From Octopus vulgaris (taxonomy: Eukaryota): a DNA stretch of 124,000 nt. This document shows positions 7,756-123,700 of the stretch, one piece after another. Where the stretch lies: the NCBI GenBank assembly GCA_951406725.2, contig OX597823.1, positions 26,184,001-26,308,000 on the forward strand, given 5' to 3'. Every line of letters starts with the position of its first letter. Within the stretch, counting starts at the first letter, position 1. The translations under genes and the position numbers were made by a program. The notes below the pieces were generated by a model. That model did no database searches. It saw nothing but the letters and a program-made list of their open reading frames with translations, and was not told where the DNA came from.

Positions 7756-8424
7756 ATGTCCGGTGGGGGCTCTTTGAAAGTAGTAGATAGCTTCTGTTAT
7801 CTAGGTGACCAAGTTACTAGTAGAGGAGGAAGTTCTGGAAGCGTAATTGTTAGAATAAGAACAAGCTGGGAAAAGTTCAGTGAGTTATTACCTTTGTTGT
7901 TAAAAAAGGGCCTCTTACTAAGAGTGAAAGGTAGATTGTATGGTGTCTGTGTGCAAACAGCTATATTAGGTGGCAGTGAAACATGGTCTGTGACAACTAG
8001 GACATGCAAAGGTATGAAAGAAATGAAGCTAGCATGCTCTCTGAATGGGTATTGTCACTGCGCATGTGTGACAGAGTGTAAATGATTTTAGAGAAAAATT
8101 GGGTATAAGAGGTATCAGTTGCAGTGTTGTAAGAGGGAAGATTGTACTGGTTTGGTCATATGATTCATATGGTCGAGGACAGCTGCATAAAAAAGTGCTG
8201 ATCTCTAATTGTGGAGGGAACCAGTGGAAGGGATAGATCTAATAAGATGCAGGATGAAGTAGTGAGAAAGGATCTTCAGATGTTGGGCCTCATAGAGATG
8301 ACAAAGGACTGAAATATTTGGTGGTTTGCTGTGTTTGAGAAGACATGTCAAGCTTAGTAAAATTGTGTCCATCCTTACATGCAGGTATGTCTGCAGTGTC
8401 CCTCCTCTCTCAACAGAGAGGACC
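7756..8424 (+). mobile_element. RTE-clade LINE 3' fragment
   Basis: VDSFCYLGD...RIRTSWEKFSELLPLL...RVKGRLY..CVQTAILGGSETW, a typical RTE RT C-terminus; degraded. Confidence 0.8.
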
Positions 8425-21830: not shown

Positions 21831-22154
21831 GGAAAGAATTGCAACTCCTTTAAAACTCTTGTGATGAGCATACTGTTAGGGTGCTGTGTTCATCATAATC
21901 ATTGTCATTTAACATCCGTTTTCCATGCTGGCATGGGTTAGACTACATGACTGAAAATTGGTAAGCTAGGAGGCTGCACCAGGTTCCAATCTAATTTGGC
22001 ATGGTTTCTAAGGTTGGATGTCCTTCCTAACGCCAACCACTCTGCTAGCACAGGTGCCAGTTGATCTTAACAAATATTGTTAGTGAAAAACCATAGGAAA
22101 AAGTATGTGTGGTTGTATTTGCATAATATATTTCAGCAAATATAATTCACTTCC

Positions 22155-22419
22155 AGTTCTACATTTAAGAGATAAGGAATTATGTACATTATTTACATTT
22201 GACAGATATTTGTCCTCATCTTGTTTGTTGTTAACACGTGTCGGCTGATATACCCTCCAGCCTTCATCAGGTGTCTTGGGGGAAATTTCAAACCTGGGTT
22301 TTCATTCCTAAGGTATTTTTTGATATTATTATCATTATTATTCTTTAGGTCACTGCCTGGAATTGAACTCGGAATCTTGGGGTTAGTAGCCCGCACGTTT
22401 AACCACAATGCCATATGCC
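22155..22419 (-). mobile_element. tRNA-headed short element carrying a degenerate hammerhead ribozyme (Penelope-terminal-repeat/SINE-like)
   Basis: Reverse complement begins ggcatatggcattgtggttaa...aagattccgagttcaattccaggc (A/B boxes, tRNA-Arg-like). It contains gacac-CTGATGA-a-ggctg(gagggtatat)cagcc-GACACG-tgtt at 22233-22275. Confidence 0.75.
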
Positions 22420-22439
22420 TGATTAAGAATAAGAATAAT

Positions 22440-23010
22440 ATTAATAATGACTGCCCTGATGCAGTACCAGGCAGTGGCTCTCATGGCTTCTGAACTTAAC
22501 TGATTGGAAGTGTTATCATGTACCTTGTTTTGTCTTGGTATAAATGATGGGCTACAGCAGTTATTCTGCTCAATACCACAGATTTGCTTGTCAGTTGTTT
22601 GACCATAACCAGTTGACCATGTCCCTTAGTAGCTGATGATATGTGCATCTCTGATCACGAGCAGAAGTAGTGGGGGAGCATCATAGCCATGTGTTGAGAG
22701 GGATATTTGGAGTTTGAATAATTCACCTCTGGAAACATGGGTATTTCATTCAACATCCTTAAACAACCTTTATTCAGGGACCTTTTGAGTGGGATGGGTT
22801 ACTTGACCAAAAGAAAATTCTAACTGGGCCCCACCTACAAGGTCATGTGCTGTTTATCTTGATATGAGATCACCATGTCGCGCACATATGGTTGTGATGC
22901 ATGTGTCTAGTGTACCCTTATCAGATGGGTAGTCATGATGGGTACACTAGGCTTCGTATATTTTACCCCAGTGTCACTTTGATGGCATGCACTGCTATCT
23001 CACTCAATAA
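22440..23010. mobile_element. ~570-bp unclassified interspersed repeat bounded by TAA-like runs
   Basis: Non-coding block between AAT-rich junctions, which I recall as an abundant octopus repeat. Not classifiable from this window. Confidence 0.4.
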
Positions 23011-23013
23011 TAA

Positions 23014-23141
23014 CATTGAAATGAGAACCCAGGTTTTAAATTTCCCTTAGACACCTGATGAAGGCTGGAGGGTATATCAGCCGAAACACTGTGTTAACAA
23101 CAAACAAGATGAGGACAAATATCCATCAAATGTAAATAATG
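23014..23141 (+). mobile_element. 3' half of the same element (inverted relative to 22155-22310) with hammerhead core
   Basis: Stem I gacac 23050-54, CTGATGA 23055-61, stem II ggctg/cagcc 23063-67/23078-82, GAAA 23083-86, stem I partner gtgtt 23091-95. Confidence 0.75.
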
Positions 23142-23751
23142 TATAATTCACTTCCGTTTCCATAAAACAATGTCAGCATGATGGAATTGAAGAGTGTTTT
23201 GTGTTACTTTCAGTATTTTCCTCCAATTGGAAAAGCTGTGTCTGTAAATGAACATCTTAGGTGTTTGTTTCTCATCTAATTAATGTTGAGTCAACTAGAG
23301 CTGTTAATTAGGCTTGTAGGTTCTTGATTTTTGGGGAATCATATATTTTACTTATGTAATAAAACGACTGTTTTGATACCATCACACTCTTACAAGAACT
23401 CACCTACCTGTCACTTGGTTATGACCTATCACTACTTTTGCTCTTCTGAACCCCACTCCTCACCTAAACCAGCTCCATGCACCTGTCTTTCTATCTCCTG
23501 TCAATGTTATTTGTTCTCTATCTTTATGCTTAACTGTCTCTTTTCCCAGACCTTCCCCTCCCTCTGTTTCAGTACCCCACTCTCTTACTAATCTGCTAGA
23601 ACAACTTTTTCTTTTTTTCTTTCCTACCACTAACTTACATGAACACCAGCTGAACAATAACTACACACTTTATTCCCCCTACTCTCTCCACCACCCCCTG
23701 TCTGCCTGACTCTCTCTCTCTTACACACTCCCAGCTTGGATGGGCTTAGAG

Positions 23752-35901: not shown

Positions 35902-37804
35902 AAAGGCAAGATTTGATGAAACTTCAAAGTTACTGTCACATTTGAAAAAAAATTATATCTAACTCTACTCATTGAATTCTTTTTTTCAGTTAATAGGTTT
36001 TGTTTTGTTTTGTTTTTATGTATATATTTTTCACTTTCCGTGTTGGGGGGTATTGCACTAATAAGCTAAGAGAAATTATGGTGATGATATACAGGTGCAA
36101 GTATATAGTAAGAATTTTACTTCCCGGCCACATAGTTCCAGGTTCAATCACATTGCGTGGCACCTTGGGCAAGTGTCTTCTACAATATAGCCTTGGGCCG
36201 GCTAAAGTCTTGTCAATAGACAGAAATTTGGTAGACGGAAACTGAAAGAAGTCCATCGAATGTGTGTGTGTCTGTTGATCTATCTAATCTATTAGTGTCT
36301 GTTTGTACCCCACCACTGCTTGACAATCAGTGTTGGTGTGTTTACATCCCCATAACTTAGCGGTTTGATGAAAGGAAAAGAGACCAAGGGAATAAATACC
36401 AAATTTGAAAAAAAAAAGTCCTGGGTTGATTTGTTTGAGTAAAATTCTTCAAGGTAGTGCCCCAGAATGGCAGCAGTCTAATGACTGAAACAAAAGATAA
36501 AATATGTCTGTATAAATATATTTTACCTTTGTTCATCTGCAATTGTTGTCTTTTCTACTTTCTCTCTCTTTTGGTCACATTGCTCTGAGCAAGCAGAGAC
36601 TATAGAGCAGTAAAAAGTTTTGTGTCTTGCAAGGTACAAAACAATCTCACTCGTGCTGGTGCTTTGATAAAATATATGTCTGCAGCACTCTGTAAAGTGG
36701 TTGGTATTAGAAAGGGCATACAGCTATAGAAACCATGCCAAAACTAGGATATACAAACAAGGTCCAGCCCGCAACCTTTCTAAGAATAACTCTGAATAAA
36801 CCTGACTTGGTCAGTGGTGACCCATCCAACCCATGCCAGCACAAAAAGCGGATCTAAATTGATGACAACGATGATGATGATATATATATATATATATAAA
36901 CTTCACTACTTAAAGAGGTATATTTTTTTAAAGGTTTATTAAATCTGAGTTATAATTTCTATAACATTGAAGTATTTCTTAATTTTAAATTATTCACAAT
37001 TTAATTTAATTTGAATTGCAATGTATTGAGAAATGCATTATATCTGTTGGGGAGTTAGCATGTGCTTTTAGTTTGGGTAGTTATTATTATTAGTGTTACA
37101 CACATACAAACTCTACCTAGTGCAAGGTGTGTGTATCCTGTTAACATTGATAACAGACTAGTTATTTTAGCCAGTGACAAAATAGGTCTTATTACTTATT
37201 ATTTGGAAAAGGAAGGATATGTCATTCATTTTTTGTGCTTATTTTATTTTTATAGATGAATTATTTATCTGCTAATTTTATTACTAACATAGAAATTTAC
37301 TTTTAAATTTGATAATTCCAATTAAGATGTATATATATATCTGGGTCTGTTGCTCTTTTCTGTCTGAAATTGGTACTCAGTTAAATGAATGTAATTCTTC
37401 AGGCGGTATTATGGAAATGTGAAAGGTAGAAGATACTAAGTCCATAAGACCACCACTCATCATCATTATTATAATTTTAACATTCACTTTTCCATGTTGG
37501 CATGGGTCAGATGAGATTTATCGAGACAGTGGTCCAACAGCTGGATGCTCTTCTTGTAATCAGCCCTTATTTGTTTCCAAGTAGTGTACTATTTCCTGTG
37601 AACAGCTAAATGACTGGATATATTTTTACAGGAGATATAAACACAGCAACACTGCTTTAATGTAGTGTGCAAACATCACAAGGGGAGGGCCTAGTCAACC
37701 ATGTAGTTAATCAGGAAGGTGTTATAAACAATAACTGGTGTAGCTGCAAAGTAAAGGTGATGCTTTATATAGATTTCCAGAAGGCTGGACAAAGTTATGA
37801 AATA

Positions 37805-37953
37805 CAGTTCTATATTTAAGAGATGAGGAATTATGTACATTATTGACATTTTGAACCTGGGTTCTCATTCCTAAGGTTATTTGTCGATGTTGTTGTTTGG
37901 CTTGGAATCTTGGGGTTAGTAGCCTGCACTCTTAACCACTACGCTATATGCCC
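37805..37953 (-). mobile_element. Internally deleted copy of the tRNA-headed element, directly after the Penelope ORF
   Basis: Same head (gcgtagtggttaagagtgcaggctactaaccccaagattcc) and tail (ccttaggaatgagaacccagg...aatgtacataattcctcatctcttaaatatagaact). The hammerhead segment is missing. Confidence 0.75.
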
Positions 37954-37982
37954 ATGGGCAATTATGGAGTGAGTTTTAGGGC

Positions 37983-38560
37983 TTATAAATCAAATATTTT
38001 CCTATTCTTCTTTGATACCGGTTCCCATATGCTACTCGTATCTACACTCAGTTTGCTTAGGGGGTTGTTGTGTCCTAGCATATGTGCTGCTGCTTTTAGT
38101 TGTATTTTTTAGTGGTGGTCTCTGTCTATTATTTTAACTTCATCCCACAGGGGGAGGTGGTCTCCATTTTACCATACATGATCAGCTATACCCGATTTAT
38201 GAATATCTCCCCATGTCACAGCTTTGCGATGTTCCTCTACCTTTATTTTGAAGGGGCGGCATGTTTTGCCTTTGTATAACCTACTACAGCTGCATGGGAT
38301 GGAGTACACACAGTCTTTGGTCATATTCTCTTCTATTGGTGGTTTTACTCGAAGAAGATATTTGCGAAGTGTTGTATTACTCTTGAATACTCTCCTGATG
38401 TCATATAAGCCACATATCTTTTGTATCTTTTTGGAGAGGCATGTTTTAGGCACTGAGCAATCCCACTCTTTATGGATGGGGGGACCTGAAGTTGAGGTAT
38501 TGTCCAATGAAGGGTGGCTTGCGGTATACGGATGTCCTGAATCCATACTTGGTGTGTGTT
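37983..38560 (-). mobile_element. Penelope-like element: GIY-YIG endonuclease C-terminal fragment
   Basis: CVYSIPCSCSRLYKGKTCRPFKIKVEEHRKAV..GDIHKSGIADHVW...WDEVKIIDR... matches the PLE GIY-YIG pattern (VYxIPCxCxxxYxGxTxR...EH...SxIAxH). Stop codon at 37983-37985. Confidence 0.85.
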
Positions 38561-38864
38561 ATTAATACGTCCAGGAATGCTAGCTGATTGTCTTTTTTTT
38601 TGTAAATAATGTAAAGTTATGAAAGTTACAAAAAACCTTATTGCCTAATATAATTAGGTTAAATGAGATGCAGTTTGGTTTATGTGCCAGGGAGTAAGGC
38701 AGTTGCAGGAGAAATGTTCAACAAAAAATAAGCTGTTATACTTGGCAACTGCCAGATTGGAAAAAGCCTTAAACAGGGTCCATCATTCATCTGGTGGTTT
38801 CTGAGGAAGCTGAGGGTAGACGAATGGGTTTTGAGAGCCATACAAGCCATTTAAAGGAGTGCTA

Positions 38865-57700: not shown

Positions 57701-59489
57701 ACTTTTGCTGAATAATATATATTCCATCTAATCTTGCAATTTTCCAGAACAAAAAATGTTTTTGTTATTTTATGTGTGTATGTGCATGTGTGTGAGAGTG
57801 TGCATGTGTGTGAGAGTGTGCATGTATAATGTATAATGTGTGAGTGTGATTTTAAAAATTAATCTTTATTTTCATGCAACTTTTTATCTGTTTGGAATAG
57901 TACCAGTTAATATGAAGAATTCATGTATATCTTCTTTATACGTTACCATTTACTACTGTCTGTTTTATATTTTCTGGCAAAACTAGCTTTGTTAGTGAAC
58001 CAGCAACTTCCTTGTGGAACATTTTTTTCCTGTCCATATTTTCCGTCTAACCACCAGTTTACAAGTCAAATGTAGTAATAATTATGAGGCACAGTGCTTT
58101 CAAGGATCATTTCTTGGATTACTGATCACAGGTGTTTTTACTTCTGTAGCCATTGTGTTGTGTCTGTCAGCAAAGCTCTTAATTCTGTTTGCACCAGCTA
58201 ACCCGAATAAGCTCTTTCCTTCTTCACAGTTGACTGGTAACTGTAACAAGTAAACTCATGCAAAAAATATTAAGTGGCTATGTGGTTAAGAAGTTTGCTT
58301 TCCATTCACATGGTTTAGTCCCACTGTTTGGCGCCTTAGGCAAGTGTCTTCTGTTATGGTCTTTCCTGACCAAAACCTTATGAGTAGACTTGATACATGG
58401 AAACTGAAAGAAGCCCCATTGTATATATGTGTGTATGTTTGTGTCTCCTTGTCTTGGCATTGCATGATTGCTGTAAATGGGTCATTCATTTCCAGTATTT
58501 TGTGAAACCATTGAAAAATATTACCTGGCTTGGAAAAAATTGTGGGTTAGCAAGAAGGAGGGCATTTAGCCATAGAAAATCTACCTCAGTAAACTCTAAC
58601 TCCTGCAAGCATAGACAAGTGGATGTTAAAACAATGATGATGATATATGTATGAAGGCACGTAGCCTAGTGGTTAGAGTGTTGGGCTTATGACCATAAGT
58701 TTGTAGATTTGATTCCTGAACTGATGCTGCAAATTGTCCTTGTAAGGGTCTTTATTTCACATTGCTCCAGTCTGATCAACTGAAAATGTGTAGCAGCCTA
58801 ATACTGGTGCAGCTACCCCTCCTTCCAGCTGTCTTATCCTGGATATTCCCCTAGATTAAGTATGATAGTGCTGAGCAAGCATCTATATCTGCTTGCAACT
58901 ACAGAGGCACCTACAACTAATGAAAGCATGGTACCAGTTATTATATCACAACTTGTTTGCAAGTGATAGCTAATCTATGGATAGATATTATGTATGGCTG
59001 TGATTAAGATGTTTGTTTTATAACCTTATGGTTCATGTTCAATTTCAATGTGTATTACCTGATGTGTCTTCTATTGTGGTCTCAAGTGATGAATATTTAT
59101 ACAAGTGGAATTTGGACAAAAACTGTCGAAGGCTGTTCTACATGTTCCCTTTGTGTCTTGTGAGCAAGCTGTGGGGCAAATTGAGTTGGATAAAATAAGT
59201 ACTGGGATGATAATAATTAACTAAACACTTGGAGGCAGCTGCCCAGTATACCTGCATGTCAGTGAATGAAACCATTAAAAAAAAGAGAGAGACAGAGAGG
59301 TTGTAGTCTGAGGTATTGAAAGAAGGAACTGACAGTAAATGTAATGACCATGCACTTTTCAGTTACTCTTTCTATAATATTGAGTTCACTTATTTTTGGT
59401 GCTATGTATGCACAATATGCAAAGTCTATTCATGTATAATGTGTGTGTGATTAATTTGGTTAAACTTATTAGTTAAGAGAAGAAATTGA

Positions 59490-70130: not shown

Positions 70131-72203
70131 ATGGAATTTAATGAAGAAGAAACTGTCAGTGTAAATACCAGGGACATTGACTTATCTCTTTTACGTAAGT
70201 CATTGCAAGCCAGGGGAAAAACAATTGATCAGCTTGTAAACTGCATATATTATGGCACCACTGAAGTCCGACAGTATATCCTTAATGAGTCGGATGTCAT
70301 TATTGAATGTAAGGCATGCCGCAACCTTTTCCGAGCATTACCTAACTTTGTGGCTCACAAGAGAATTTATTGTATGGATTCACACCTTAATGTCAACATA
70401 CCACTACTACGTGATCCAGAAGAAGTAATCTCTGTGAATCCTGAGCCACCAGATGGTGAAGAAGGTGATGATTTTATTGAAACGTCTATTGGCCTGGCGA
70501 AGCAGAATTTGATGAATGGACGAGATATGTCCCTTGATGAAAATTACATGAGTTCAGAGAGCGATACTGTAAGGTCAGAGACTCAGTTCTACGAGAGAAT
70601 TTGCAATCAGCTTGAAAAGCAAAAACCTGACCCCACCATTGGTGTTCGGTTCGAGCCAATTGAAGGAACTGATGTTGCTGTGAGAGTTGTGCCTCTCACT
70701 TCAGAATGTGATGCTAAGCTAGCTCAGGAAAACAATATATCAAAACAGAAAGTCCGTATACTAAGTCATCCGAATAAGATACAATCTAGCTCCAAGGTTA
70801 CTCTTAAAACGGATCTAAAAACAAAGAAAGATATTAAGTTAAAAGCGGATTTTCGACAATTGCGCTGCTTGGAATGTAATCGGACAATGTCCTCTCGGCG
70901 TTATCTGGTGGAACACATTCTGAATTTACACAGCGACAAGCGGCGTTATTTCTCTTGTCCTTACTGCAAAGTTAAGTTCCGTTATTTTCACTGTGTTGTA
71001 CGTCATCTTCGAAGAGTACATGAATGTAGCAAAGATGTGATAGACAACATGCGTGAAAATCTCAGGAACTCTAGCTGGATCGAGAACTCTCCCAACAAAG
71101 CAAATAACAAAGTGCAACCCTTGCCCTCTACATCTTCACATTTTAAAGGTGAAGCTTCAAAGATTATTTCCCCAAAGAACAAAGAACATTCTGGTAAAGT
71201 TCAAAAACTGAAAGTGAAGTTATTTAGTCAAAAGAACACTCCTAGCAAGAGCAACCATACAGAATTTTATCCTCCTCTTACTGTCGTCAAGCAGGAAGTT
71301 TTAAGCGAGGAAGAGTCTGCAAAGGATTCTGATTCAGAAGTCAACACGGCTAAAGATTTGGATGTGAAAGATATGACAGGAAAACACCGGCCTCCTACTT
71401 TAGCTCAGAGAAAGAAAATGGCCATGCTAATGGATAAGAAAAGCTTGACCTGTTTACAGTGCAATCGAGGCTTTTCGAGAATGTCTGGTTTGGTGCGACA
71501 TGTTGCGCACCATTTGGGCTGGAAACGATTCAAATGCAAGTTGTGTATGTACTCTGGCTATGACAGGTATGTTTGCAAATCGCATATTGAAAGAAACCAT
71601 CTTGGTAAAGTTCCTGGTCTAACAAGGAAAGTAATGGATTACTACATTGTTGACCTCGAGGATGGTAAAATTGTTAATCCAGATGGTACTAAAAGTAAGA
71701 AGTTAGGTCTCAAACTTGGTGTAAATCCTACTAAAAAGTCTACTTTATCATCAGCATCCACAGACATAAAACCAGTCACAGTATGCACAAGTCTGGGAAA
71801 TAGCAGTGGGCTTTCCAGTGTGGCCACTGTCAGACTTTCACCTCTTTCAAACGAACAACTCCAGTTGAGTAAAGGTTGTGCTATATCCGCCGACAAGTCT
71901 GAGAAACCTCTAAAAGGTTCTGACTTGAAGAAGAAACTTCTCTCTATGGTTGACTACAGAACTCTCAAGTGTCTTGAGTGTAATAGAACATGGAACAAAA
72001 GATCACATTTACTGCGGCATGCAGCACACCACATTGGTTGGAAGCGGTTTAAATGCAAGTTGTGTGTGTTCTCAGGTTATGATCGCTACATGTGTAAGTC
72101 TCATCTTAAACGATGCCATCTGGGCAAAATCCATGGACTCACAGTAAAAGTACTTGACTACTATATAGTAGATATGATGGAAGAAGAAAACGACGAGGTT
72201 TAA
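70131..72203 (+). CDS. ZNF800: ZNF800-like C2H2 zinc-finger protein, 690 aa, single coding exon
   Basis: Only long non-repetitive ORF. The N-terminus (DIDLSLLRKSLQ...ILNESDVIIECKACRNLFRALPNFVAHKRIYC) resembles the ZNF800 N-terminal CCHC-type finger region as I recall it. Three further pairs of CxxC...HxxxH fingers follow. A polypyrimidine tract and AG acceptor lie at 70110-70111, and an in-frame TGA at 70113-70115 precedes the ATG. Orthology was not tested by search. Confidence 0.8.
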   Translation: MEFNEEETVSVNTRDIDLSLLRKSLQARGKTIDQLVNCIYYGTTEVRQYILNESDVIIECKACRNLFRALPNFVAHKRIYCMDSHLNVNIPLLRDPEEVISVNPEPPDGEEGDDFIETSIGLAKQNLMNGRDMSLDENYMSSESDTVRSETQFYERICNQLEKQKPDPTIGVRFEPIEGTDVAVRVVPLTSECDAKLAQENNISKQKVRILSHPNKIQSSSKVTLKTDLKTKKDIKLKADFRQLRCLECNRTMSSRRYLVEHILNLHSDKRRYFSCPYCKVKFRYFHCVVRHLRRVHECSKDVIDNMRENLRNSSWIENSPNKANNKVQPLPSTSSHFKGEASKIISPKNKEHSGKVQKLKVKLFSQKNTPSKSNHTEFYPPLTVVKQEVLSEEESAKDSDSEVNTAKDLDVKDMTGKHRPPTLAQRKKMAMLMDKKSLTCLQCNRGFSRMSGLVRHVAHHLGWKRFKCKLCMYSGYDRYVCKSHIERNHLGKVPGLTRKVMDYYIVDLEDGKIVNPDGTKSKKLGLKLGVNPTKKSTLSSASTDIKPVTVCTSLGNSSGLSSVATVRLSPLSNEQLQLSKGCAISADKSEKPLKGSDLKKKLLSMVDYRTLKCLECNRTWNKRSHLLRHAAHHIGWKRFKCKLCVFSGYDRYMCKSHLKRCHLGKIHGLTVKVLDYYIVDMMEEENDEV

Positions 72204-90900: not shown

Positions 90901-93366
90901 ACTATTGGTTTTTCTAATGTTTGATGTTCATTTAGTAATGTCTGCTAACAGTGTTAGTAGATATTACATATACTAACCGCTTTAGGCAATCATGTGAAGC
91001 AGTTACTTGACCTGCTAGAAATAGCAGCCATATCTTTCCAATCACAGGAAAGGAAAAAAGATCAAGTAGTTCTTAGGTACACTGAATCTGAAAAAGAGAC
91101 AGGATGGTCATAGATGGAGCAAACTGACATGGATCTAAACTAGGGTTTCTTAAAAAGAAGGTGGAAGCTGAGAGGATTGAAATGATGGCAGACAAATTGC
91201 CATCCTTAAGGAAATAGAGATTTTTAAAACTTGTCCAGCTTCACAGAAATATATTTGTTCTCCTAACAACTCTTCACTCTGTGTCCACTCACTAAAATGC
91301 ACTCCACCCATTTTAGTTTTGCAATCTTGTGGACTTACTCACCCTATCCAATCTTTGGTTCCACTTACATACACCTCACTGGAACTTGAATGCACCCCCA
91401 CTTCCGCATCACATCTTCACCATCTCTCTCCTCTCTTTCTTCCCCCTCTCTCCCCTACTGTGGTGGCCATGTATCGCCTTTACTGCAAGACACCTGTTTT
91501 TGTCCCTCTACTCATAGTCTCTCTAATCTCTCGTCACCTGGCACAAAGCTATTCCTCTCTCGGTTAAGAGGGTCTTGTCTTGTAAGTTATTTGGTGACCT
91601 CACTGCTGCTGGTGCCATGCAAAAAAAGCACCCAATACACTCTGCATAATGTTTGGTGTTCAGAAGGTCATTGAACCATACCAAAGCAGACCAGCTGGGT
91701 TTGGTGTAGACTTCTGACTTGTGAGCATAGAAAACAGGTAGTAAATGACAATTAGTAAAGAACGGAGTGGTATTCACTAATATTTTGTGAGTGAAATGTC
91801 AGCTTGAAAGCCATTGGTCTGCCCCACTTAGCATTCAGATTATTTAGTCAAAAGTATTGTTCATTTATCCACATTGTTTTGAATTCATCCTGCATTATCT
91901 TGTAGCTTAAAGATTTCAATGATGTAATCGTTTATTTTTAGAATGACATTGTAGGGTAAGTGTGAGAGACTGGATCTGGCCAGGTAGAGTATTTTACCTG
92001 CTTTTCAAGTCAGCGATCTCGTTCCACACAGCTTTGATGGTGCAAAGGAAGTGGATGATTTGTTGACAGAACTGATAACAACAATACATATATTGCAAAT
92101 TTTTAGAAGCAAGCAGAAATGTAGACAAATACACACGTGCATACAATATAACAGTCTTCTTTCAGTTTCTGTCTATCAATTCCACTCAAAGACTTTGGTC
92201 AGTTTGGGACTGACCAGAGGTGCTGTGCTGTGGAACTGAACCTGAAACCCCATGGTTAGAAGGCAGACTCTTTAACCACACAGCCATGCCTATGCCTGTA
92301 TATCATATATAGATGTGTATGTTCCTAATTGTAAGCCACAGTCATAAACCTAGGTGTCCAAAATTTTTGTTTGTGGGGTATATCTTTTAGTGGAGAAGGT
92401 CATTGACTGTGTGATTTTCTGATACTTTCTATAAGCCCAGGCAAAGCTGGGTGCTGCTGCTATATTTATAAAGTTGGATGCAGAACAACTATCAGATACA
92501 CAGAACAGCTAGTGCCTGCACACATGCACAGAAAATGGACCATTTTGACAAATACAAAGAACAGACATCACACACGTACACAGAGCAGCCATCAAAAACC
92601 AATAAAGAGTGGCTGGAGGGAGGCTGTGAGGAGAAATATAGCTAAATATAGAGAGGGTGATGTGACATTATAGTATTTAGGAAGTAGTGACAGTTTCAAG
92701 AAAATATCGGTGTGTGTTTGTGTATATATATATATATATATAATATATACATACATATATGGGTACAGGACATCAAAAAAAAAACGTCAAACACAATGAG
92801 AAACGAAAACATAAAATCAAAAACATGGAAACAAACTTTTTTTCAAACAACAAAAACAGAGTACAAGACATACAACACAAGGAATATTCCCCTTCTTCAG
92901 TTGTGCCTGTTTCGTCTACTCCGCGTTTCAAAGGTAAGGACAAGACGCGACTTTGTTGAAACAGTCCTTCCCGTAAAACAAATTAAATAAAATTTGGGAT
93001 TTTTGCGGAGGAGTAAAAGTGGTAACAAGAACAAGACAGTAAGAAGTAAACGACAGGACAAAGAGAATAACACAGTAAAAACAAACGACGAGTGCTGTTG
93101 AACCAAGATGATGGAAAAATATTTTATATAGGTTCTGAGAGGTAATGGTGTCATTGAGACCCAAAGGTGTCAGGTAATGCTGAATAAGTGCAATAGATGG
93201 ACTGCAGTTAAGTTCCAGGTTCGGTGATTATACAAATAAGGGGTTTAACATTGGTCATATGTCAGCGTGTGTATATAAAAATTCTATTTTGTAATGAGAT
93301 AAAGAACCAAGGCTGTGTAGATTTTAGAACATTTATAGATAGAATGTCTCTCTCTCTCTCTTTCTT

Positions 93367-113685: not shown

Positions 113686-114830
113686 AGGATGCACCACCCA
113701 AAGGCAGACGTAGATCGCCTTTACCTTCCCAGAGCCCAAGGAGGTCAAGGCCTGATCCAATTTGAACTAGCTTACAAAACAACCACAATTGGACTGGCCA
113801 AATATCTCGAAATATATTGAATGACTGGATGCTAAAGCTCGTGGAAAATCACGAGAGACGAAAGAAGCTTCATTCTATTATAAAGGAAAGCAAAAAATTT
113901 GCTATTGATCTCGTGCAGGATACCCAAACAGAACAACCCGAGGGAAGTACGGCAATTATTGTTGCAAAGAAGGTGAAAATAATGGCAACGAAAAAAGCGC
114001 ACGAGCAATTGGCTGATAGGTGGGAGGAGAAACCTCTGCACGGCAAATATGTGACCCGCAGCAAACAAGCTGATGTTGACCAGAAGCAAACCCATCAGTG
114101 GCTACGGAGCTCAGGGCTAAAAGCAGAGAGTGAAGGTTTCATCCTGGCTGCTCAAGATCAAAGCCTATTAACCCGGAACTACCAGGCCAATGTGATGAAA
114201 AATGGAGCAGACCCAAAATGCCGATTCTGCAACGACATGATTGAAACAGTGGACCACCTAATCTCTGGATGTAAAGTCTTAGCTCCAGTGGAGTATAAAT
114301 TAAGACATGACAGAGTTGGCCAATATCTACACTGGCTAATAAGTCGGCATTACAATATCAAAACTGCTGACAAGTGGTATAATCACCACCCTGAGGCTGT
114401 AACTGAAGGAGAAAATGTAACCATTCTGTGGGACTTTCCAGTACATACAGACCGAACCATCAAGGCCAATAAACCAGATATTGTTGTGAAAGACCAAAAC
114501 AATAAAGTTTGCTTATTGATCGACATGAGCATCCCCTGTGATCATAATATCTCAGCGAAAGAGTTTGACAAGCTCAGAAAATATAAAGACCTACTCATTG
114601 AAATTGAGAAAATGTGGCATCTCAAGGCGGTTACAATACCAGTGATCGTAGGAGCACTAGGAATGATCAAGAAGGGAACCGAAAATTATATGAGAATGAT
114701 CCCTGGCTTACCATCCCTGCAAGAAGTGCAAAAGATTGTCTTAACTGGTACATCACACGTATTGAGAAGAGCATTGTCGATGTGAGAACTGTTGCTGCTC
114801 ATGTATTTTAATTTAACTTAAAAAAAAAAA
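113686..114830 (+). mobile_element. Young 5'-truncated R4/Dong-clade LINE (CCHC and restriction-like endonuclease)
   Basis: 322-aa open frame with CRFC...H...C zinc knuckle, RHD, and KPDI...LID..IP...K..KY (PD-(D/E)xK REL) motifs. An upstream part, HHPKADVDRLYLPR..GG.GL, is joined by a frameshift near 113815. Confidence 0.9.
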
Positions 114831-120751: not shown

Positions 120752-123700
120752 GTATGTGTGTGTGTGTGTGTGTGTGTGTGACAAGCTTCTTTCAGTTTCT
120801 GTCTACCAAATCCATTCACAAGACTTTGGTCAATCTGAGGCTACAGTAGAAGACGCCTGCCCAATGTACCATGCAGTGGGATTGAACATGGAACCATGTG
120901 GTTGGGAAGCAAGCTTCTTACCACACAGCTACACCTGTGCCTATGCGCAGCCACGCCTGCACCTATCTGGGTATAATGACTTATTCCTCTTCTTTTAAGA
121001 GAGTAGCTTGAAATTTGAATGAATTTCTGCTGTTATTTCTAGTAGACAGAGCACCCTTGTTCGTTTGTAAACTCAAACCTAATCATTGTAGTCGAATGAG
121101 AGAATTTATGCTGCAAAGATAACAGCTTCAATCACTCAGTGCAATCTACAAATCCTTTGTTCCAATTATACTGTGCCTCCATTTCATTGAATATTTTGAC
121201 ATGCAGTAGTTCTATAGACCAAACTGATTCAACATCTAATTTATGCTTTCAGTTAAATTTCTCCTTCCATATATTAAATGTTACAACTCAATGAACCACA
121301 GAAGCAATTGTGAAGCGTTACAAACAAACCTTCTTTTAGATTATGATTAAAATTTATTTACAGCCTTTCAACATTTCTTCTCTGATGAAGGACCCTGCTG
121401 GAAACATTAGAATGCTCCTCTCCTCATAACACACACACACACATATATATATATACATGGCAGTATAGCTTCTTCTGATGATAATTTCCCTACAAACTTC
121501 AATGTACAGAGCTTCAACTCCAACCACATCAATTTAATCAGTATAAGAGGAATTGCAAAGGTCAGGGCTGCCATTTCACTTCCTTCAGTTAATAAAGATA
121601 AAAAGGGGTCAGCTTTTTTACAAAAGAAAACTGAGAAGGGATTCAACAATCAGTTGTTATCTGTAAGACAGTGAACTGGTAGAGGTTTCAGAGCATTTGA
121701 TAGAATACCTTGTGGTGTTTGTCCAGCTCTGTAATCTGAATTCAAATCCTGTCAAGATCAACTTTATCTTTTATCCTTTCAAGATCAATAAAAATGTATC
121801 AATCCTTGATAATGAATTGACAATACTGTATGAATATCAGACTGAATGCCTGGTGGTATTTGTTGCACTTCTTTGCATTCTGAGTTCAAATCCCTCCATA
121901 GCCTTCTTAGGTGGTTGGCTTAATCCACCACCTAGTCTAACTCCACCACCTGACACATTTGTCTGCTGTGTTGCATGCATTCAGACGTGGATAATGAATT
122001 GTGTTGGGTATATTTTCTGAAAATAAAACGAGATGGTCATGGCTGGAAAGCTTTGATTACAGACTTGCATGTTCAGAGTTGATCTGAGGCTATACAAGAA
122101 CAATAACTTCATATAAAATAAGGACCCGTAATATAGGTACAAGGCAACCACAAATTTCGGGACTTGCCACATTTGATAATATTGATCGCCAGATCTTAAA
122201 AGCTACATATTTTATTAACTCTGGGGAGATGAAAGGTACAGTCACTTTCATGAGATTTGTTTTCAGAACCTAGAAAGAACATAACTAAATGTCAGAAAGT
122301 ATTTGATCTGGCATTCTACCAATTTTATCAATCTAGCCCCTCTGTTTACCAATTTTCTCATTCTATCACCTTTGCCCACCCCTTCCACTCAACCAATTCT
122401 TCATACTCCACCCACCTTTGTCTACCATTCTACCAATTATATTGTTCTCTATTCTTTGTCTACAACTCTACCAAATCTTTTTCCTTGCTCTACCAGTCTA
122501 CCAATACATGCCTGTCTCTCACTTTTCAAGTCAGATATGGGTACAGTGTGGTTCAGAAATTCATATCAGAACTCCATGGTTCTGAGTTCAGTCTCACTGA
122601 ATGCCATCATGAGCAAATGTCTTCTTACACAGCCTGAGATGCTGACATATTTGAACAAACTAGATTAATTGAAATAGTGATGGTAAAATAACAAATAGCA
122701 ATAACTGTAATTTGGAAATTTACTCTTTTGTTGCTAAATTTCTAGAGAATAGACTACCTAATGCTTCAATTAACTCTTAATATAATCAGATTTTGGAAGG
122801 CATCTAGTAAACTACATTTAGCTACATCTTTCTCTTTCAATGACCCTTCTTAATTCTGGGCTGTAAGCTCTTCCTCTCTCAGATCTTGTTGGTTTTGATT
122901 TGTCATCAATGCTTCTATAATTTTGTTCTTTTCTAGATAGGAGTCTTGGCCCTGTACAAATCCATACTGACCTCTGGGAAGAAGTAATCCATATTAACCT
123001 GACCATTATTCTTTAATCTATCCAGCATTGGAGGCCCTACCAGGAGATTGCACTCCGCTGGCAGAGCTCCCAGGATCATTGAGGCATACAAGCTACCACA
123101 TCACAGCAAGGACTGGACTTTGTGGTGGATGGAAATAACTTCATATAATATCATACTGATACTGACCGACTTAAATGTCATAACATGATTCACATTACAA
123201 TGAGAGTTTGATCTAGATTTTATAATTTTTACATGAACACATTAATAGAAGCAGTCTAAGATGGGTTGGTATTAAAAGCATTAAGAAGTGAAGAAGTGTT
123301 GTTATTGTTATTTAGCACTAAGTTGGCCCTGATTGAGAAAGCATTCAAGTAATAATCATTTTGTCTTATTTACAGAAATAAAGGTGTCTGATTTAGGCAC
123401 AAGGCCAATAATCTTCAGAGGAGAAGTTAGTGACTATAAAGGACCTTAGTTTATGACTGATACTTTATTTTATTGACTGCAAAGCATGAAAAGCAAAGAT
123501 GAATCCAGCAGGATTTGAACTCAGAACATAAAAAATCTGAAGAATATCAAAAAGCATTTCTTCCAACACTCTTATGACTCTGCCAGCTCATCACCTTATT
123601 TTCAGGAATTATTTACACAGGAATGTAAAAGCACGTGGCTTAATAGTTAAGTTGTTGGGCTCATGACTATAAAGCTGTGACTTTAATCCCCAGACTGGCC

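What the first reader, a model, noticed from the sequence alone, without database searches (positions are those of the whole stretch)
37805..38560. The tRNA-like head sits 30 nt after a Penelope GIY-YIG stop codon: a Penelope element with a built-in Pol III promoter?
Seen: on the minus strand the GIY-YIG ORF ends (TAA at 37983-85). About 30 nt later, on the same strand, the same tRNA-like head and tail as 22155-22419 begin, with the hammerhead segment deleted in this copy. Established: Penelope elements carry hammerheads in their terminal repeats, and SINEs normally share a 3' tail with their partner retroelement. Inference: the tRNA-plus-hammerhead unit is the terminal repeat of this Penelope family, and solo units spread as Penelope-mobilised SINEs. 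Penelope-dependent tRNA SINEs would be an unusual partnership. The alternative is a chance SINE insertion just after the ORF.
Basis: partly seen in the sequence, partly recalled or inferred. Interest (0 to 1): 0.8.

Follow-up and report, generated by a model that had tools for sequence, protein, structure and literature searches.

The report
Penelope retrotransposon with built-in tRNA-like promoter module
The tRNA-like piece after the stop codon is not a stray SINE but a conserved, built-in part of this family of Penelope-like retrotransposons, carrying the signals of an RNA polymerase III promoter; whether it spawns true SINEs is still unproven.

Summary
On the minus strand a decayed, 5'-truncated Penelope-like (PLE) ORF ends at TAA 37985-37983. 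A tRNA-derived head starts 29 nt later (37953). It matches the unit at 22155-22420 and lacks that unit's hammerhead block.

The junction is not a one-off. The same order (ORF end, TATA-like TTTATAA, about 30-nt linker, head with A and B boxes, spacer, minimal hammerhead, tail) follows the ORF in at least 12 independent copies. These belong to four PLE families from three or more sequence sources. One is an intact tandem array (L022) in which the head fills the 123-nt gap between 861-aa ORFs. Between families the TATA, A box, B box, hammerhead and tail are conserved (68-100%). The inter-box and spacer stretches are not (26%), and no head folds as a tRNA.

Both window insertions carry PLE marks: 12- and 14-bp target-site duplications, tail-out inverted partner copies, and two alternative 3' ends about 35 nt apart.

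So "terminal repeat of this Penelope family" is supported. "Penelope-mobilised SINEs" is not established: one clean solo unit starts at head +1, and none of 16 copies does in 128 kb of a second species. Pol III use is inferred, not shown. I found no paper describing this.

The parts
38613..38624 (.). Target-site duplication (AAAGTTATGAAA on the + strand), upstream copy for the 37803-38612 insertion
   Evidence: Exact 12-mer present at 38613-38624 and 37791-37802, flanking the insertion
38601..38612 (+). 12-nt inverted fragment of the element's tail (TGTAAATAATGT, ending at the short-form 3' end), abutting the target-site duplication. It is the tiny partner copy of a tail-out inverted pair
   Evidence: Exact match to the unit tail in the opposite orientation, next to the duplication
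37983..38592 (-). 5'-truncated, decayed 3' end of a Penelope-like element ORF (end of the RT domain plus the GIY-YIG-type endonuclease domain). Frameshift near 38470; in-frame stops at 38171-69 and 38111-09; terminal TAA at 37985-83
   Evidence: Translation. tblastn of RVT_1-bearing relatives P0037/P0142 aligns colinearly. Homologues; Pfam on relatives
37983..37989 (-). TTTATAA: TATA-like box at -36..-30 from head +1; it overlaps the stop codon here
   Evidence: 100% conserved between the octopus family and family 2, where it lies about 80 nt downstream of the real stop. Family 3 has TTTAATA
37954..37982 (-). 29-nt linker. Its 3' half is nearly the reverse complement of the first 12 nt of the head
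   Evidence: Conserved in all ORF-linked copies; 52% identity between families
37901..37953 (-). tRNA-derived head, 3'-truncated by an internal deletion. A box TAGCGTAGTGG at 37946-37936; B box lost in this copy
   Evidence: nhmmer head profile E=6e-18; alignments; coordinates
37848..37900 (-). Remnant of the spacer and pre-hammerhead block (…GGAATGAGAACCCAGGTTCAAAAT). The hammerhead block is deleted between 37848 and 37847
   Evidence: Alignment to the full unit
37803..37847 (-). Tail with the long-form 3' end (…TAAATATAGAACT at 37806), plus 3 extra nt (GTA)
   Evidence: 93.6% to the unit tail. Same end as the 22155 copy
37791..37802 (.). Target-site duplication, downstream copy
22155..22420 (-). 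Solo full unit. Head 22420-22348 (A box 22413-22403, B box 22370-22359), AT-rich spacer 22347-22276, minimal hammerhead 22275-22233 (decayed: GAAAC changed to GACAC), post-hammerhead stretch and long-form tail 22232-22155. It starts at head +1
   Evidence: Rfam tRNA 15.6 bits, below threshold; upstream 60 nt unrelated to the linker
23006..23141 (+). Partial unit without a head: pre-hammerhead block, minimal hammerhead 23050-23095, short-form 3' end (…AAATAATG). It is the inverted partner of the 22155-22420 copy
22141..22154 (.). 14-bp target-site duplication TATAATTCACTTCC (second copy at 23142-23155), flanking the composite insertion 22155-23141
   Evidence: Longest shared word between the two flanks; coordinates
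23142..23155 (.). Second copy of the 14-bp target-site duplication

Best explanation
What it is. Window 37803-38612 is one old, 5'-truncated insertion of an endonuclease-bearing Penelope-like element (PLE). The tRNA-like head after its stop codon is not a separate SINE. It is a fixed module of this PLE lineage's inter-ORF region (pLTR).

Anatomy, in order:
1. Stop codon.
2. TATA-like TTTATAA (cephalopod families only).
3. A linker of about 30 nt.
4. A tRNA-derived segment that keeps the A and B boxes but not the cloverleaf.
5. A variable spacer.
6. The ORF start.
7. A minimal type-I hammerhead inside the first codons.
8. A 'tail' where reverse transcription starts. It has two alternative 3' ends about 35 nt apart.

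Because PLEs insert as more-than-unit copies, this module sits both 3' of one ORF and 5' of the next.

Likely mechanism (inferred, not shown). The A and B boxes, helped by the upstream TATA-like box, recruit TFIIIC/TFIIIB. Transcription then starts at or next to head +1. The resulting RNA runs through the hammerhead to the reverse-transcription start site, so the PLE enzyme can copy it. A short run-off of this kind would give solo units such as 22155-22420. That unit was inserted by PLE machinery (target-site duplication, inverted partner copy, PLE-type 3' ends). On this view the element carries its own SINE-type source gene, but in the sampled DNA this has produced few solo copies.
For: SHOWN

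(1) Recurrent junction.
- Octopus family: window, L001 (O. vulgaris OX597819.1) and L003.
- Family 2, same ENA assembly: L002, L004, L005 (two copies), L006, L017, L018.
- Family 3: L021.
- Family 4: the intact tandem array L022. It has 861-aa ORFs, a 2709-bp period and copies 99.8-100% identical. The head lies 7 nt after TAA and 54 nt before the next ATG.

(2) The module also lies 5' of the ORF. In L004 the hammerhead-plus-tail fragment 7945-8109 runs into the ORF N-terminus. In L006 7299-7366 the B-box part of the head is joined to the ORF. L022 shows the same in an intact array.

(3) Mosaic conservation between the octopus family and family 2:

| Block | Identity |
|---|---|
| TATA | 100% |
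| Head 5' end + A box | 76% |
| B box | 70% |
| Pre-hammerhead | 83% |
| Hammerhead | 81% |
| Tail | 68% |
| Inter-box | 26% |
| Spacer | 26% |

In L022 the B box GGTTCGAATCC matches the consensus at 11/11 positions, and the A box is TGGTCTAGTGG.

(4) No head is a foldable tRNA. ARAGORN finds none. The best Rfam tRNA score is 15.6 bits against a gathering score of 29. Folding energies are no better than shuffles. So the boxes are selected, not the RNA shape.

(5) The hammerhead core CUGANGA...GAAAC-GU-H is present with a 0-nt loop III, as in published PLE min-HHRs (PMC4209133). 79% of cells pair, against 12-51% when the partners are slid. There is one compensatory U-A to C-G pair. Rfam Hammerhead_1 scores 12.3 bits, E=7.8, on L022.

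(6) PLE insertion marks in the window: target-site duplications of 12 and 14 bp, tail-out inverted partner copies, and short versus long 3' ends about 35 nt apart. These match the optional 30-40-bp tail, internal RT initiation and two-strand priming reported for a PLE in vitro (PMC11167929).

(7) The solo unit starts at head +1; its upstream 60 nt are unrelated to the linker.

FROM KNOWLEDGE
TATA-like boxes at -31/-24 modulate type-2 Pol III promoters and SINE transcription (PMC7279448).
Against: - There are no expression data of any kind.
- A TATA box about 30 nt upstream of head +1 would equally place a Pol II start there. L022 has no TATA.
- Head +1 is only 7 nt upstream of the A box, which is short for a Pol III start.
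- Only one clean solo unit starts at +1. The L001 locus I first read as two more is ambiguous, because the linker is nearly the reverse complement of the head start.
- None of 16 copies in 128 kb of the family-2/3 species starts at the head.
- The decayed octopus ORF-linked copies have lost the B box (win37, L001a).
- Hammerhead helix I is only 2-3 bp in families 2 and 3.
- One related ORF end (L020, a TARA scaffold) shows no head in the 68 nt available.
- The GIY-YIG assignment is not confirmed by Pfam, by a PDB sequence profile or by Foldseek at significant levels.
Confidence: 0.55

Rival explanations
1. The head is an integral pLTR module, but there is no SINE and no Pol III use. The TATA box drives ordinary Pol II transcription of the downstream ORF from about head +1. 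Solo units are by-products: cDNA made from the 5'-proximal reverse-transcription start site of a normal PLE transcript, or plain 5'-truncated copies. The A and B boxes then persist as a relic or as TFIIIC-bound boundary sites.
For: - PLE pLTRs are known to hold the promoter, and RT starts internally near the ORF start (PMC11167929; PMC6765202).
- TTTATAA sits at -36..-30.
- The 5' ends of unit copies are scattered: ORF, linker, and unit positions 74, 111, 174, 217, 269, 285, 299.
- Only one copy starts at +1. The head is rare in the window.
Against: - A and B boxes are kept near-perfect across four families and in the intact L022 element, while the sequence between them diverges. That is hard to explain for a relic.
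- L022 has no TATA.
Confidence: 0.33
2. The tRNA-like segment acts at the RNA level. It would be a processing or punctuation signal (RNase P / RNase Z) that cuts multimeric PLE transcripts between ORFs, alongside the hammerhead.
For: It lies exactly between tandem ORFs in L022. One solo copy begins exactly at tRNA +1, where RNase P would cut.
Against: There is no acceptor or T stem. ARAGORN finds none. Rfam tRNA is below threshold or absent, even in the intact L022 element. Folds are no better than shuffles.
Confidence: 0.07
3. Chance insertion of an independent tRNA-derived SINE just after the ORF in this one copy.
For: The window holds other tRNA-derived SINE heads (58656, 92298, 120932), so SINE insertions are common here.
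Against: - The same linker and head follow the ORF end in at least 12 independent copies of four families.
- One 12-bp target-site duplication encloses the ORF fragment and the unit together.
- This head type is rare in the window.
Confidence: 0.02

Closest known systems
Canonical EN+ Penelope-like elements (Penelope/Poseidon type, e.g. PAc of Anolis)
   Same: - A single ORF with RT followed by a C-terminal endonuclease domain.
- Tandem or partial-tandem copies giving pLTRs.
- A minimal type-I hammerhead overlapping the ORF start.
- Reverse transcription starting inside the 5' part of the ORF, which gives an optional 30-40-bp tail.
- Priming on both strands, 5' truncation, inverted partial copies.
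(PMC11167929, PMC4209133.)
   Different: No described PLE, in the papers I could search, has a tRNA-derived segment with A and B boxes between the stop codon and the next start codon.
Sm-alpha / Sj-alpha SINE-like retroposons of Schistosoma
   Same: Short non-coding units that combine a Pol III (tRNA-type) promoter with a hammerhead ribozyme, and are thought to be copied by a retroelement enzyme in trans (review PMC6765202; PMC8490949).
   Different: Those are free-standing and often tandem, and they carry a canonical, active hammerhead. They have not been shown (in what I read) to sit inside an autonomous element. Here the same combination is physically part of the autonomous PLE, and solo copies are rare. 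Sequence homology was not tested.
Animal non-LTR retrozymes and other non-autonomous PLE derivatives
   Same: Hammerhead-bearing, non-coding sequences related to PLE pLTRs and thought to use PLE enzymes (PMC7229834; bioRxiv 10.64898/2026.07.22.740005; non-autonomous Chlamys elements in PMC8557442).
   Different: Retrozymes are tandem repeats that give circular RNAs, and no tRNA-type promoter is reported for them. The solo unit here is single, flanked by a target-site duplication, and starts with a tRNA-derived head.
Classical tRNA-derived SINE with its LINE partner
   Same: A tRNA-derived 5' head with A and B boxes, a body, and a 3' end identical to that of the autonomous partner.
   Different: The partner is a PLE, not a LINE. 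The whole 'SINE' is a subsequence of the partner rather than a chimera sharing only the tail. Copy number looks low.

Membership tests
Penelope-like element (EN+) | Single ORF with a reverse transcriptase domain followed by a C-terminal endonuclease domain | tested here: met
   Relatives P0142 (826 aa) and P0037 (545 aa) carry Pfam RVT_1, with the query-homologous domain at their C-terminus. They align colinearly to window 38613-38001 and to L004, L017, L018 and L021. L022 encodes intact 861-aa ORFs with RVT_1.
Penelope-like element (EN+) | The endonuclease is of the GIY-YIG type | tested here: inconclusive
   Pfam gives no hit on the window pieces or on P0008, P0030 and P0001. PF01541 hits P0146 and P0131 at E about 1e-3, below the gathering score. 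A PDB sequence-profile search finds nothing. The AF2 core has pLDDT 81-91; the best Foldseek hit is T4 EndoII, which I recognise as a GIY-YIG nuclease, but at E=1.3 and probability 0.30. The motif VYSIPCSCG-x-YKGET-R...EH is seen by eye.
Penelope-like element (EN+) | Head-to-tail arrangement giving pseudo-LTRs on both sides of the ORF | tested here: met
   L022 is a tandem array with a 2709-bp period. 5' pLTR fragments are joined to the ORF in L004 and L006.
Penelope-like element (EN+) | Minimal type-I hammerhead motif in the pLTR | tested here: met
   The core CUGANGA / GAAAC-GU-H, an unpaired nucleotide before helix II, the G10.1-C11.1 pair and a palindromic ACGU helix III are present. Rfam Hammerhead_1 aligns as predicted but only at 12.3 bits. 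Cleavage was not tested.
Penelope-like element (EN+) | Insertion marks: variable target-site duplication, 5' truncation, inverted partial copies, optional 30-40-bp tail | tested here: met
   Target-site duplications of 12 and 14 bp; tail-out inverted pairs in the window, L004, L005 and L017; short and long 3' ends about 35 nt apart.
tRNA-derived SINE | Internal type-2 Pol III promoter (A and B boxes at tRNA-like spacing) | tested here: met
   win22: A box TGGCATTGTGG (10/11) and B box AGTTCAATTCC (10/11 to GGTTCRANNCC), about 43 nt apart. L001 A box 11/11. L022 B box 11/11. This is a sequence match only.
tRNA-derived SINE | Many copies sharing a discrete 5' end at the head | tested here: inconclusive
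   One clean case (22420). L001 12060 is ambiguous. None of 16 copies in 128 kb of the second species starts at the head. A whole-genome census was not possible: the JGI scan, the viral scan and the search with the translated unit all found nothing.
tRNA-derived SINE | 3' end shared with an autonomous partner that supplies RT | tested here: met
   The solo unit's tail is identical in form to the ORF-linked copies' long-form end. Its inverted partner uses the short-form end.
tRNA-derived SINE | Transcription by RNA polymerase III | not testable with these tools
   No expression or ChIP data are available. The unit has no T4 run on the sense strand in most copies, but that is weak evidence.
tRNA gene | Cloverleaf recognised by tRNA detectors | tested here: not met
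   ARAGORN finds 0 in the window and in all loci. Rfam tRNA scores 15.6 bits against a gathering score of 29 for win22, and gives nothing for L003, L021 or L022. Minimum free energies are no better than shuffles.
Animal non-LTR retrozyme | Tandem arrays of short hammerhead-bearing monomers | tested here: not met
   Solo and partial units occur singly or as inverted pairs. No tandem monomer arrays were seen in about 250 kb.

The most novel reading that the evidence does not exclude
A clade of autonomous Penelope-like retrotransposons carries a working tRNA-type Pol III promoter between its stop and start codons. Pol III, rather than or alongside Pol II, would then make the RNA that is reverse-transcribed. 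That RNA could be a short head-to-RT-start-site transcript, in effect a SINE encoded inside its own partner. It could even be the whole 2.7-kb unit.

The sense strand is almost free of T>=4 terminators:
- 0 in the 15-kb L022 array.
- Phe codons TTT 0 versus TTC 17 in the L022 ORF.
- 0-2 T4 runs per family-2 copy, at positions not shared between copies, against 3.4-5.7 expected.

Caution: conditioning on codon usage removes the significance, and a control ORF is also free of T4 runs.
Probability: 0.15. Interest if true: 0.85.

Novelty: new variant of a known kind. Interest (0 to 1): 0.62.

Why it matters
How Penelope-like elements are transcribed is still unclear, and so is the role of their terminal repeats and weak hammerheads. 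A conserved tRNA-derived A/B-box module placed exactly between tandem ORFs gives a concrete hypothesis that a wet lab can test: TFIIIC and Pol III recruitment, or a Pol II/Pol III dual promoter.

It would also link three things so far treated apart: PLE pLTRs, hammerhead-bearing SINE-like elements such as Sm-alpha, and retrozymes. If Pol III use is confirmed, it would be a case of an autonomous retrotransposon carrying the source gene of its own SINE. That bears on how SINEs arise. It also bears on annotation of the very large 'unclassified SINE' fraction of octopus genomes (PMC13282606).

Tried and rejected
1. Chance SINE insertion: rejected by the recurrent junction and by the single target-site duplication around ORF fragment and unit.
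2. Pfam on the window's ORF pieces and on close intact relatives: no GIY-YIG call.
3. PDB sequence-profile search and AF2 plus Foldseek: nothing significant.
4. Rfam at gathering thresholds on the whole window: nothing. In the E-value runs, only sub-threshold tRNA and Hammerhead_1 hits are relevant. The other weak hits (snoRNA, miRNA, Histone3, TLS-PK4) I take as noise.
5. JGI metagenome scan with a head pattern: ten unrelated bacterial chance hits.
6. Viral-contig scan with the hammerhead pattern: zero hits.
7. Protein search with a stop-free translation of the solo unit, meant to harvest many octopus copies: no candidates. A genome-wide 5'-end census was therefore out of reach.
8. My first reading of L001 12060-12085 as two heads abutting at +1: withdrawn, because the linker is nearly the reverse complement of the head start.
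9. L019, an apparent counter-example: explained as a break inside the ORF, since another copy of the same 90% cluster (L021) has the full unit.
10. Tree of the endonuclease domain, to place the head-less L020 lineage: unresolved polytomy.
11. T4-run depletion as proof of Pol III read-through: not significant once codon usage is kept, and a control ORF behaves alike.
12. Cloverleaf or RNase P idea: no structural support.
Full report
**1. Observation**

The window is AT-rich eukaryotic DNA (36% GC). Its only named close protein hit is from Octopus vulgaris (P0031).

On the minus strand a reading frame homologous to the C-terminal part of reverse-transcriptase proteins runs from about 38592 to TAA at 37985-37983. 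It carries one frameshift and two in-frame stops. Twenty-nine nucleotides after the stop, at 37953, the sequence GGGCATATAGCGTAGTGGTTAAG... begins.

BLASTN of the 22140-22430 unit shows that 37952-37805 holds that unit's head, pre-hammerhead stretch and tail. The B-box end and the hammerhead block are missing. The description in the finding is correct.

The label 'GIY-YIG' is less secure:
- Pfam does not call it on this copy or on intact close relatives.
- Longer relatives have RVT_1 followed by this domain, and two of them reach PF01541 only at E about 1e-3.
- A PDB sequence profile finds nothing.
- An AlphaFold model with a confident beta-beta-alpha-alpha-beta-alpha core has T4 EndoII as best Foldseek hit, at a non-significant E=1.3.

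The architecture (RT plus a C-terminal CxC...YKGET...R...EH domain), the tandem arrays, the hammerhead and the insertion marks described below together make the Penelope-like (PLE) assignment safe.

**2. Is the junction a one-off?**

No. I searched the longest stop-free piece of the ORF and then an intact relative, and fetched the DNA around the hits.

| Family | Source | Loci with the junction |
|---|---|---|
| Octopus family | window; O. vulgaris chromosome OX597819.1; an unrelated ENA scaffold | window, L001, L003 |
| Family 2 (63-70% amino-acid identity) | ENA assembly ERZ21867824 | L002, L004, L005 (two copies), L006, L017, L018 |
| Family 3 | same assembly | L021; unit 63% identical to family 2 |
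| Family 4 (about 55% identity) | ENA ERZ25068762, 49% GC | L022 |

In the octopus family the ORF end is followed by the same linker (TTTATAAGCCCTAAAA.TCACTCCATAATTGCC.A.G) and the same head at the same offset.

L022 is the most telling locus. It is an intact tandem array of 861-aa ORFs, 99.8-100% identical, with a 2709-bp period. The 123-nt gap between ORFs reads TAA, 7 nt, a tRNA-derived segment (A box TGGTCTAGTGG, B box GGTTCGAATCC), 54 nt, ATG.

There were two apparent exceptions. L019 breaks inside the ORF, and L021, another copy from its 90% cluster, has the unit. L020, a 540-bp TARA scaffold, shows no head in the 68 nt that remain after its stop. A tree of the endonuclease domain could not place L020.

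**3. Anatomy of the module**

Aligning the families gives this order:
- stop codon;
- TATA-like TTTATAA at -36..-30 (octopus) or -38..-32 (family 2), where it lies about 80 nt downstream of the real stop and so is not conserved for coding;
- a linker of about 30 nt;
- the head with its A box at +8;
- an inter-box stretch of 30 nt (octopus, L022) or about 50 nt (family 2);
- the B box;
- a variable spacer, which in octopus is a (TAA)n-rich stretch that has expanded to about 1 kb in L001;
- a conserved block GGTTCGAAATT.C;
- a minimal hammerhead;
- AACAA.AAAGATGA.GACAA...TCCG;
- the 3' end.

In L022 the ORF starts 54 nt after the B box and the hammerhead lies in codons about 21-37. In family 2 a conserved ATG (GGTTATGGCAAACGG) opens the same frame through the hammerhead into the RT ORF (L004). 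So the 'unit' is the short inter-ORF spacer plus the first part of the ORF. This is the layout reported for the Anolis PLE PAc, whose hammerhead overlaps the ORF start and whose RT initiates inside the ORF (PMC11167929).

5' copies of the module joined to an ORF are seen in L004 (7945-8109), L006 (7299-7366, containing the B box) and L022. The unit therefore does lie at both ends.

**4. What is conserved**

Identity between the octopus and family-2 consensus sequences:

| Block | Identity |
|---|---|
| TATA | 100% |
| Linker | 52% |
| Head 5' end + A box | 76% |
| Inter-box | 26% |
| B box | 70% |
| Spacer | 26% |
| Pre-hammerhead | 83% |
| Hammerhead | 81% |
| Post-hammerhead tail | 68% |

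No head is a tRNA by structure:
- ARAGORN finds none anywhere.
- The best Rfam tRNA score is 15.6 bits against a gathering score of 29, and nothing is found for the intact L022 head.
- Folding energies equal those of shuffles.

Selection has kept the promoter boxes, not the cloverleaf. That favours a DNA-level role (TFIIIC/TFIIIB binding) over tRNA mimicry.

**5. The hammerhead**

Parsed by hand, the octopus motif reads:
- helix I GACAC/GUGUU;
- C3-A9 CUGAUGA;
- one unpaired A;
- helix II GGCUG/CAGCC;
- G12-A14 GAA;
- A15.1-C15.2-G16.2-U16.1 as a palindromic ACGU without a loop;
- U17 as the cleavage site.

These are the features listed for PLE min-HHRs (PMC4209133).

On 12 copies, 79% of cells pair, against 12-51% with slid partners. 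Helix II shows a U-A to C-G exchange with U-G intermediates. Shuffling controls are not significant with so few related sequences. Helix I is only 2-3 bp in families 2 and 3. Rfam's type-I model aligns L022 exactly as parsed, with a 0-nt loop III, but at 12.3 bits.

The motif is therefore real as a PLE-type min-HHR. Its activity is untested.

**6. How the window copies were inserted**

The 37803-38612 insertion is flanked by the exact 12-mer AAAGTTATGAAA (37791-37802 and 38613-38624). It begins with a 12-nt inverted fragment of its own tail (38601-38612).

The composite insertion 22155-23141 is flanked by the exact 14-mer TATAATTCACTTCC. It consists of two copies with their 3' ends pointing outwards. 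One is the full solo unit on the minus strand, ending ...GTAGAACT. The other is a headless copy on the plus strand, ending about 35 nt earlier at ...AAATAATG.

The same short end is used by L001a and corresponds to the family-2 3' end. The long end is used by win37, win22 and L001b. Tail-out inverted pairs recur in L004, L005 (twice) and L017.

These features match the priming on both strands, the internal RT initiation at two adjacent sites and the optional 30-40-bp tail shown for PAc in vitro. Both window copies, the solo unit included, were therefore made by PLE machinery.

**7. SINE or not**

The solo unit starts at head +1. Its upstream 60 nt show no similarity to the linker (P=0.4-0.9). 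This is what a transcript starting at the head would give. It is, however, one case.

A second locus (L001 12060) that I first read as two heads meeting at +1 cannot be used. The linker (-16..-3) is nearly the reverse complement of head +1..+12.

Other points against an established SINE:
- The head is rare: two strong matches in 124 kb. The window's other tRNA-derived SINE heads are of different families.
- In 128 kb of the family-2/3 species, none of 16 unit copies begins at the head. Their 5' ends are scattered.
- Attempts to sample more octopus copies failed.

A Penelope-dependent SINE is therefore possible but not shown. A solo pLTR reverse-transcribed from the 5'-proximal initiation site of an ordinary PLE transcript would look the same.

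**8. Mechanism**

Best reading (confidence about 0.55 for the promoter role; about 0.9 for 'integral module'): the TATA-like box plus the A and B boxes form a type-2 Pol III promoter of the kind SINEs use. Upstream TATA-like boxes at -31/-24 are known to tune such promoters (PMC7279448). Transcripts starting at the head carry the hammerhead and the RT start site.

The main rival (about 0.33) is a Pol II promoter using the same TATA, with the boxes as a relic or as boundary sites.

An RNA-level RNase P/Z punctuation role (about 0.07) lacks structural support.

A speculative extension is that the whole unit is Pol III-transcribable. T>=4 runs are nearly absent from the sense strand of every copy, and TTT codons are absent from the L022 ORF (0 of 17 Phe). 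But conditioning on codon usage removes the significance, and a control ORF behaves alike.

**9. Comparison with the literature**

The following are all known:
- PLE hammerheads, pLTRs and tails;
- retrozymes as PLE-dependent non-autonomous elements (PMC7229834; bioRxiv 10.64898/2026.07.22.740005);
- non-autonomous Chlamys and short Penelope elements (PMC8557442, PMC6685494);
- the Pol III plus hammerhead SINE-like Sm-alpha elements of schistosomes (PMC6765202, PMC8490949).

In eight full-text searches and the papers I read, I found no report of a tRNA-derived A/B-box segment inside a PLE. Two octopus repeat surveys do not link SINEs and PLEs. The library lacks many subscription papers and Repbase notes, so prior description cannot be excluded.

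I rate this a new variant of a known kind.

Noticed in passing
window 22421-23005: 585 bp of unique sequence sit between the two inverted unit copies, inside a single insertion flanked by the 14-bp target-site duplication. No other copy exists in about 250 kb held. Possible origins: a template switch, a variant spacer, or a later insertion.
   Followed up: partly
L001 12090-13040 (O. vulgaris): The AT-rich spacer of the unit has seeded about 1 kb of (TAA)n/(CAA)n microsatellite blocks. The plus-strand copy there has a head and part of the linker, but no hammerhead or tail within 1 kb.
   Followed up: partly
window 37954-37982 with 37942-37953; L001, L003: The 3' half of the linker is nearly the reverse complement of the first 12 nt of the head (CCATAATTGCCCA / TGGGCATATGG). 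This gives a hairpin across the putative start site. Family 2 keeps a shorter version (TGTCC-AGCA-GGACA) with one compensatory change. L022 has none.
   Followed up: partly
window 37847/37848; L003 about 590: Two ORF-linked copies lack the hammerhead block through different internal deletions. In the window copy the deletion lies between two AAAT repeats. Hammerhead-less units can evidently persist, or are made during copying.
   Followed up: no
L022 1-15012; L004 7945-10400; L017 8326-10780; L018 8040-10873: Sense-strand runs of four or more T are almost absent from all copies of these PLEs. The L022 ORF uses TTC for all 17 Phe codons. The depletion is not significant after conditioning on codon usage.
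   Followed up: yes
L001 about 6773 (-); L002 about 15118 (+): There are further minimal-hammerhead-like motifs with a palindromic helix III (ACAGCUGU, ACACGUGU) in unrelated sequence context. They probably belong to other PLE families.
   Followed up: no
window 58656-58703 (+), 92231-92298 (-), 120876-120932 (-): Other tRNA-derived SINE heads of different families. They show that ordinary SINEs are common here and distinct from the PLE head.
   Followed up: partly
window 70131-72203 (+); 113817-114785 (+): A 690-aa ORF has only a weak C2H2 zinc-ribbon hit. A 322-aa ORF has a weak zf-RVT hit and is probably another retroelement remnant.
   Followed up: partly
L022 (ENA ERZ25068762 ctg131720_1x_c): The 17.8-kb contig is named as circular and consists almost wholly of near-identical tandem PLE units. 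This may be an assembly effect of the tandem repeat, or a hint of extrachromosomal circular copies.
   Followed up: no
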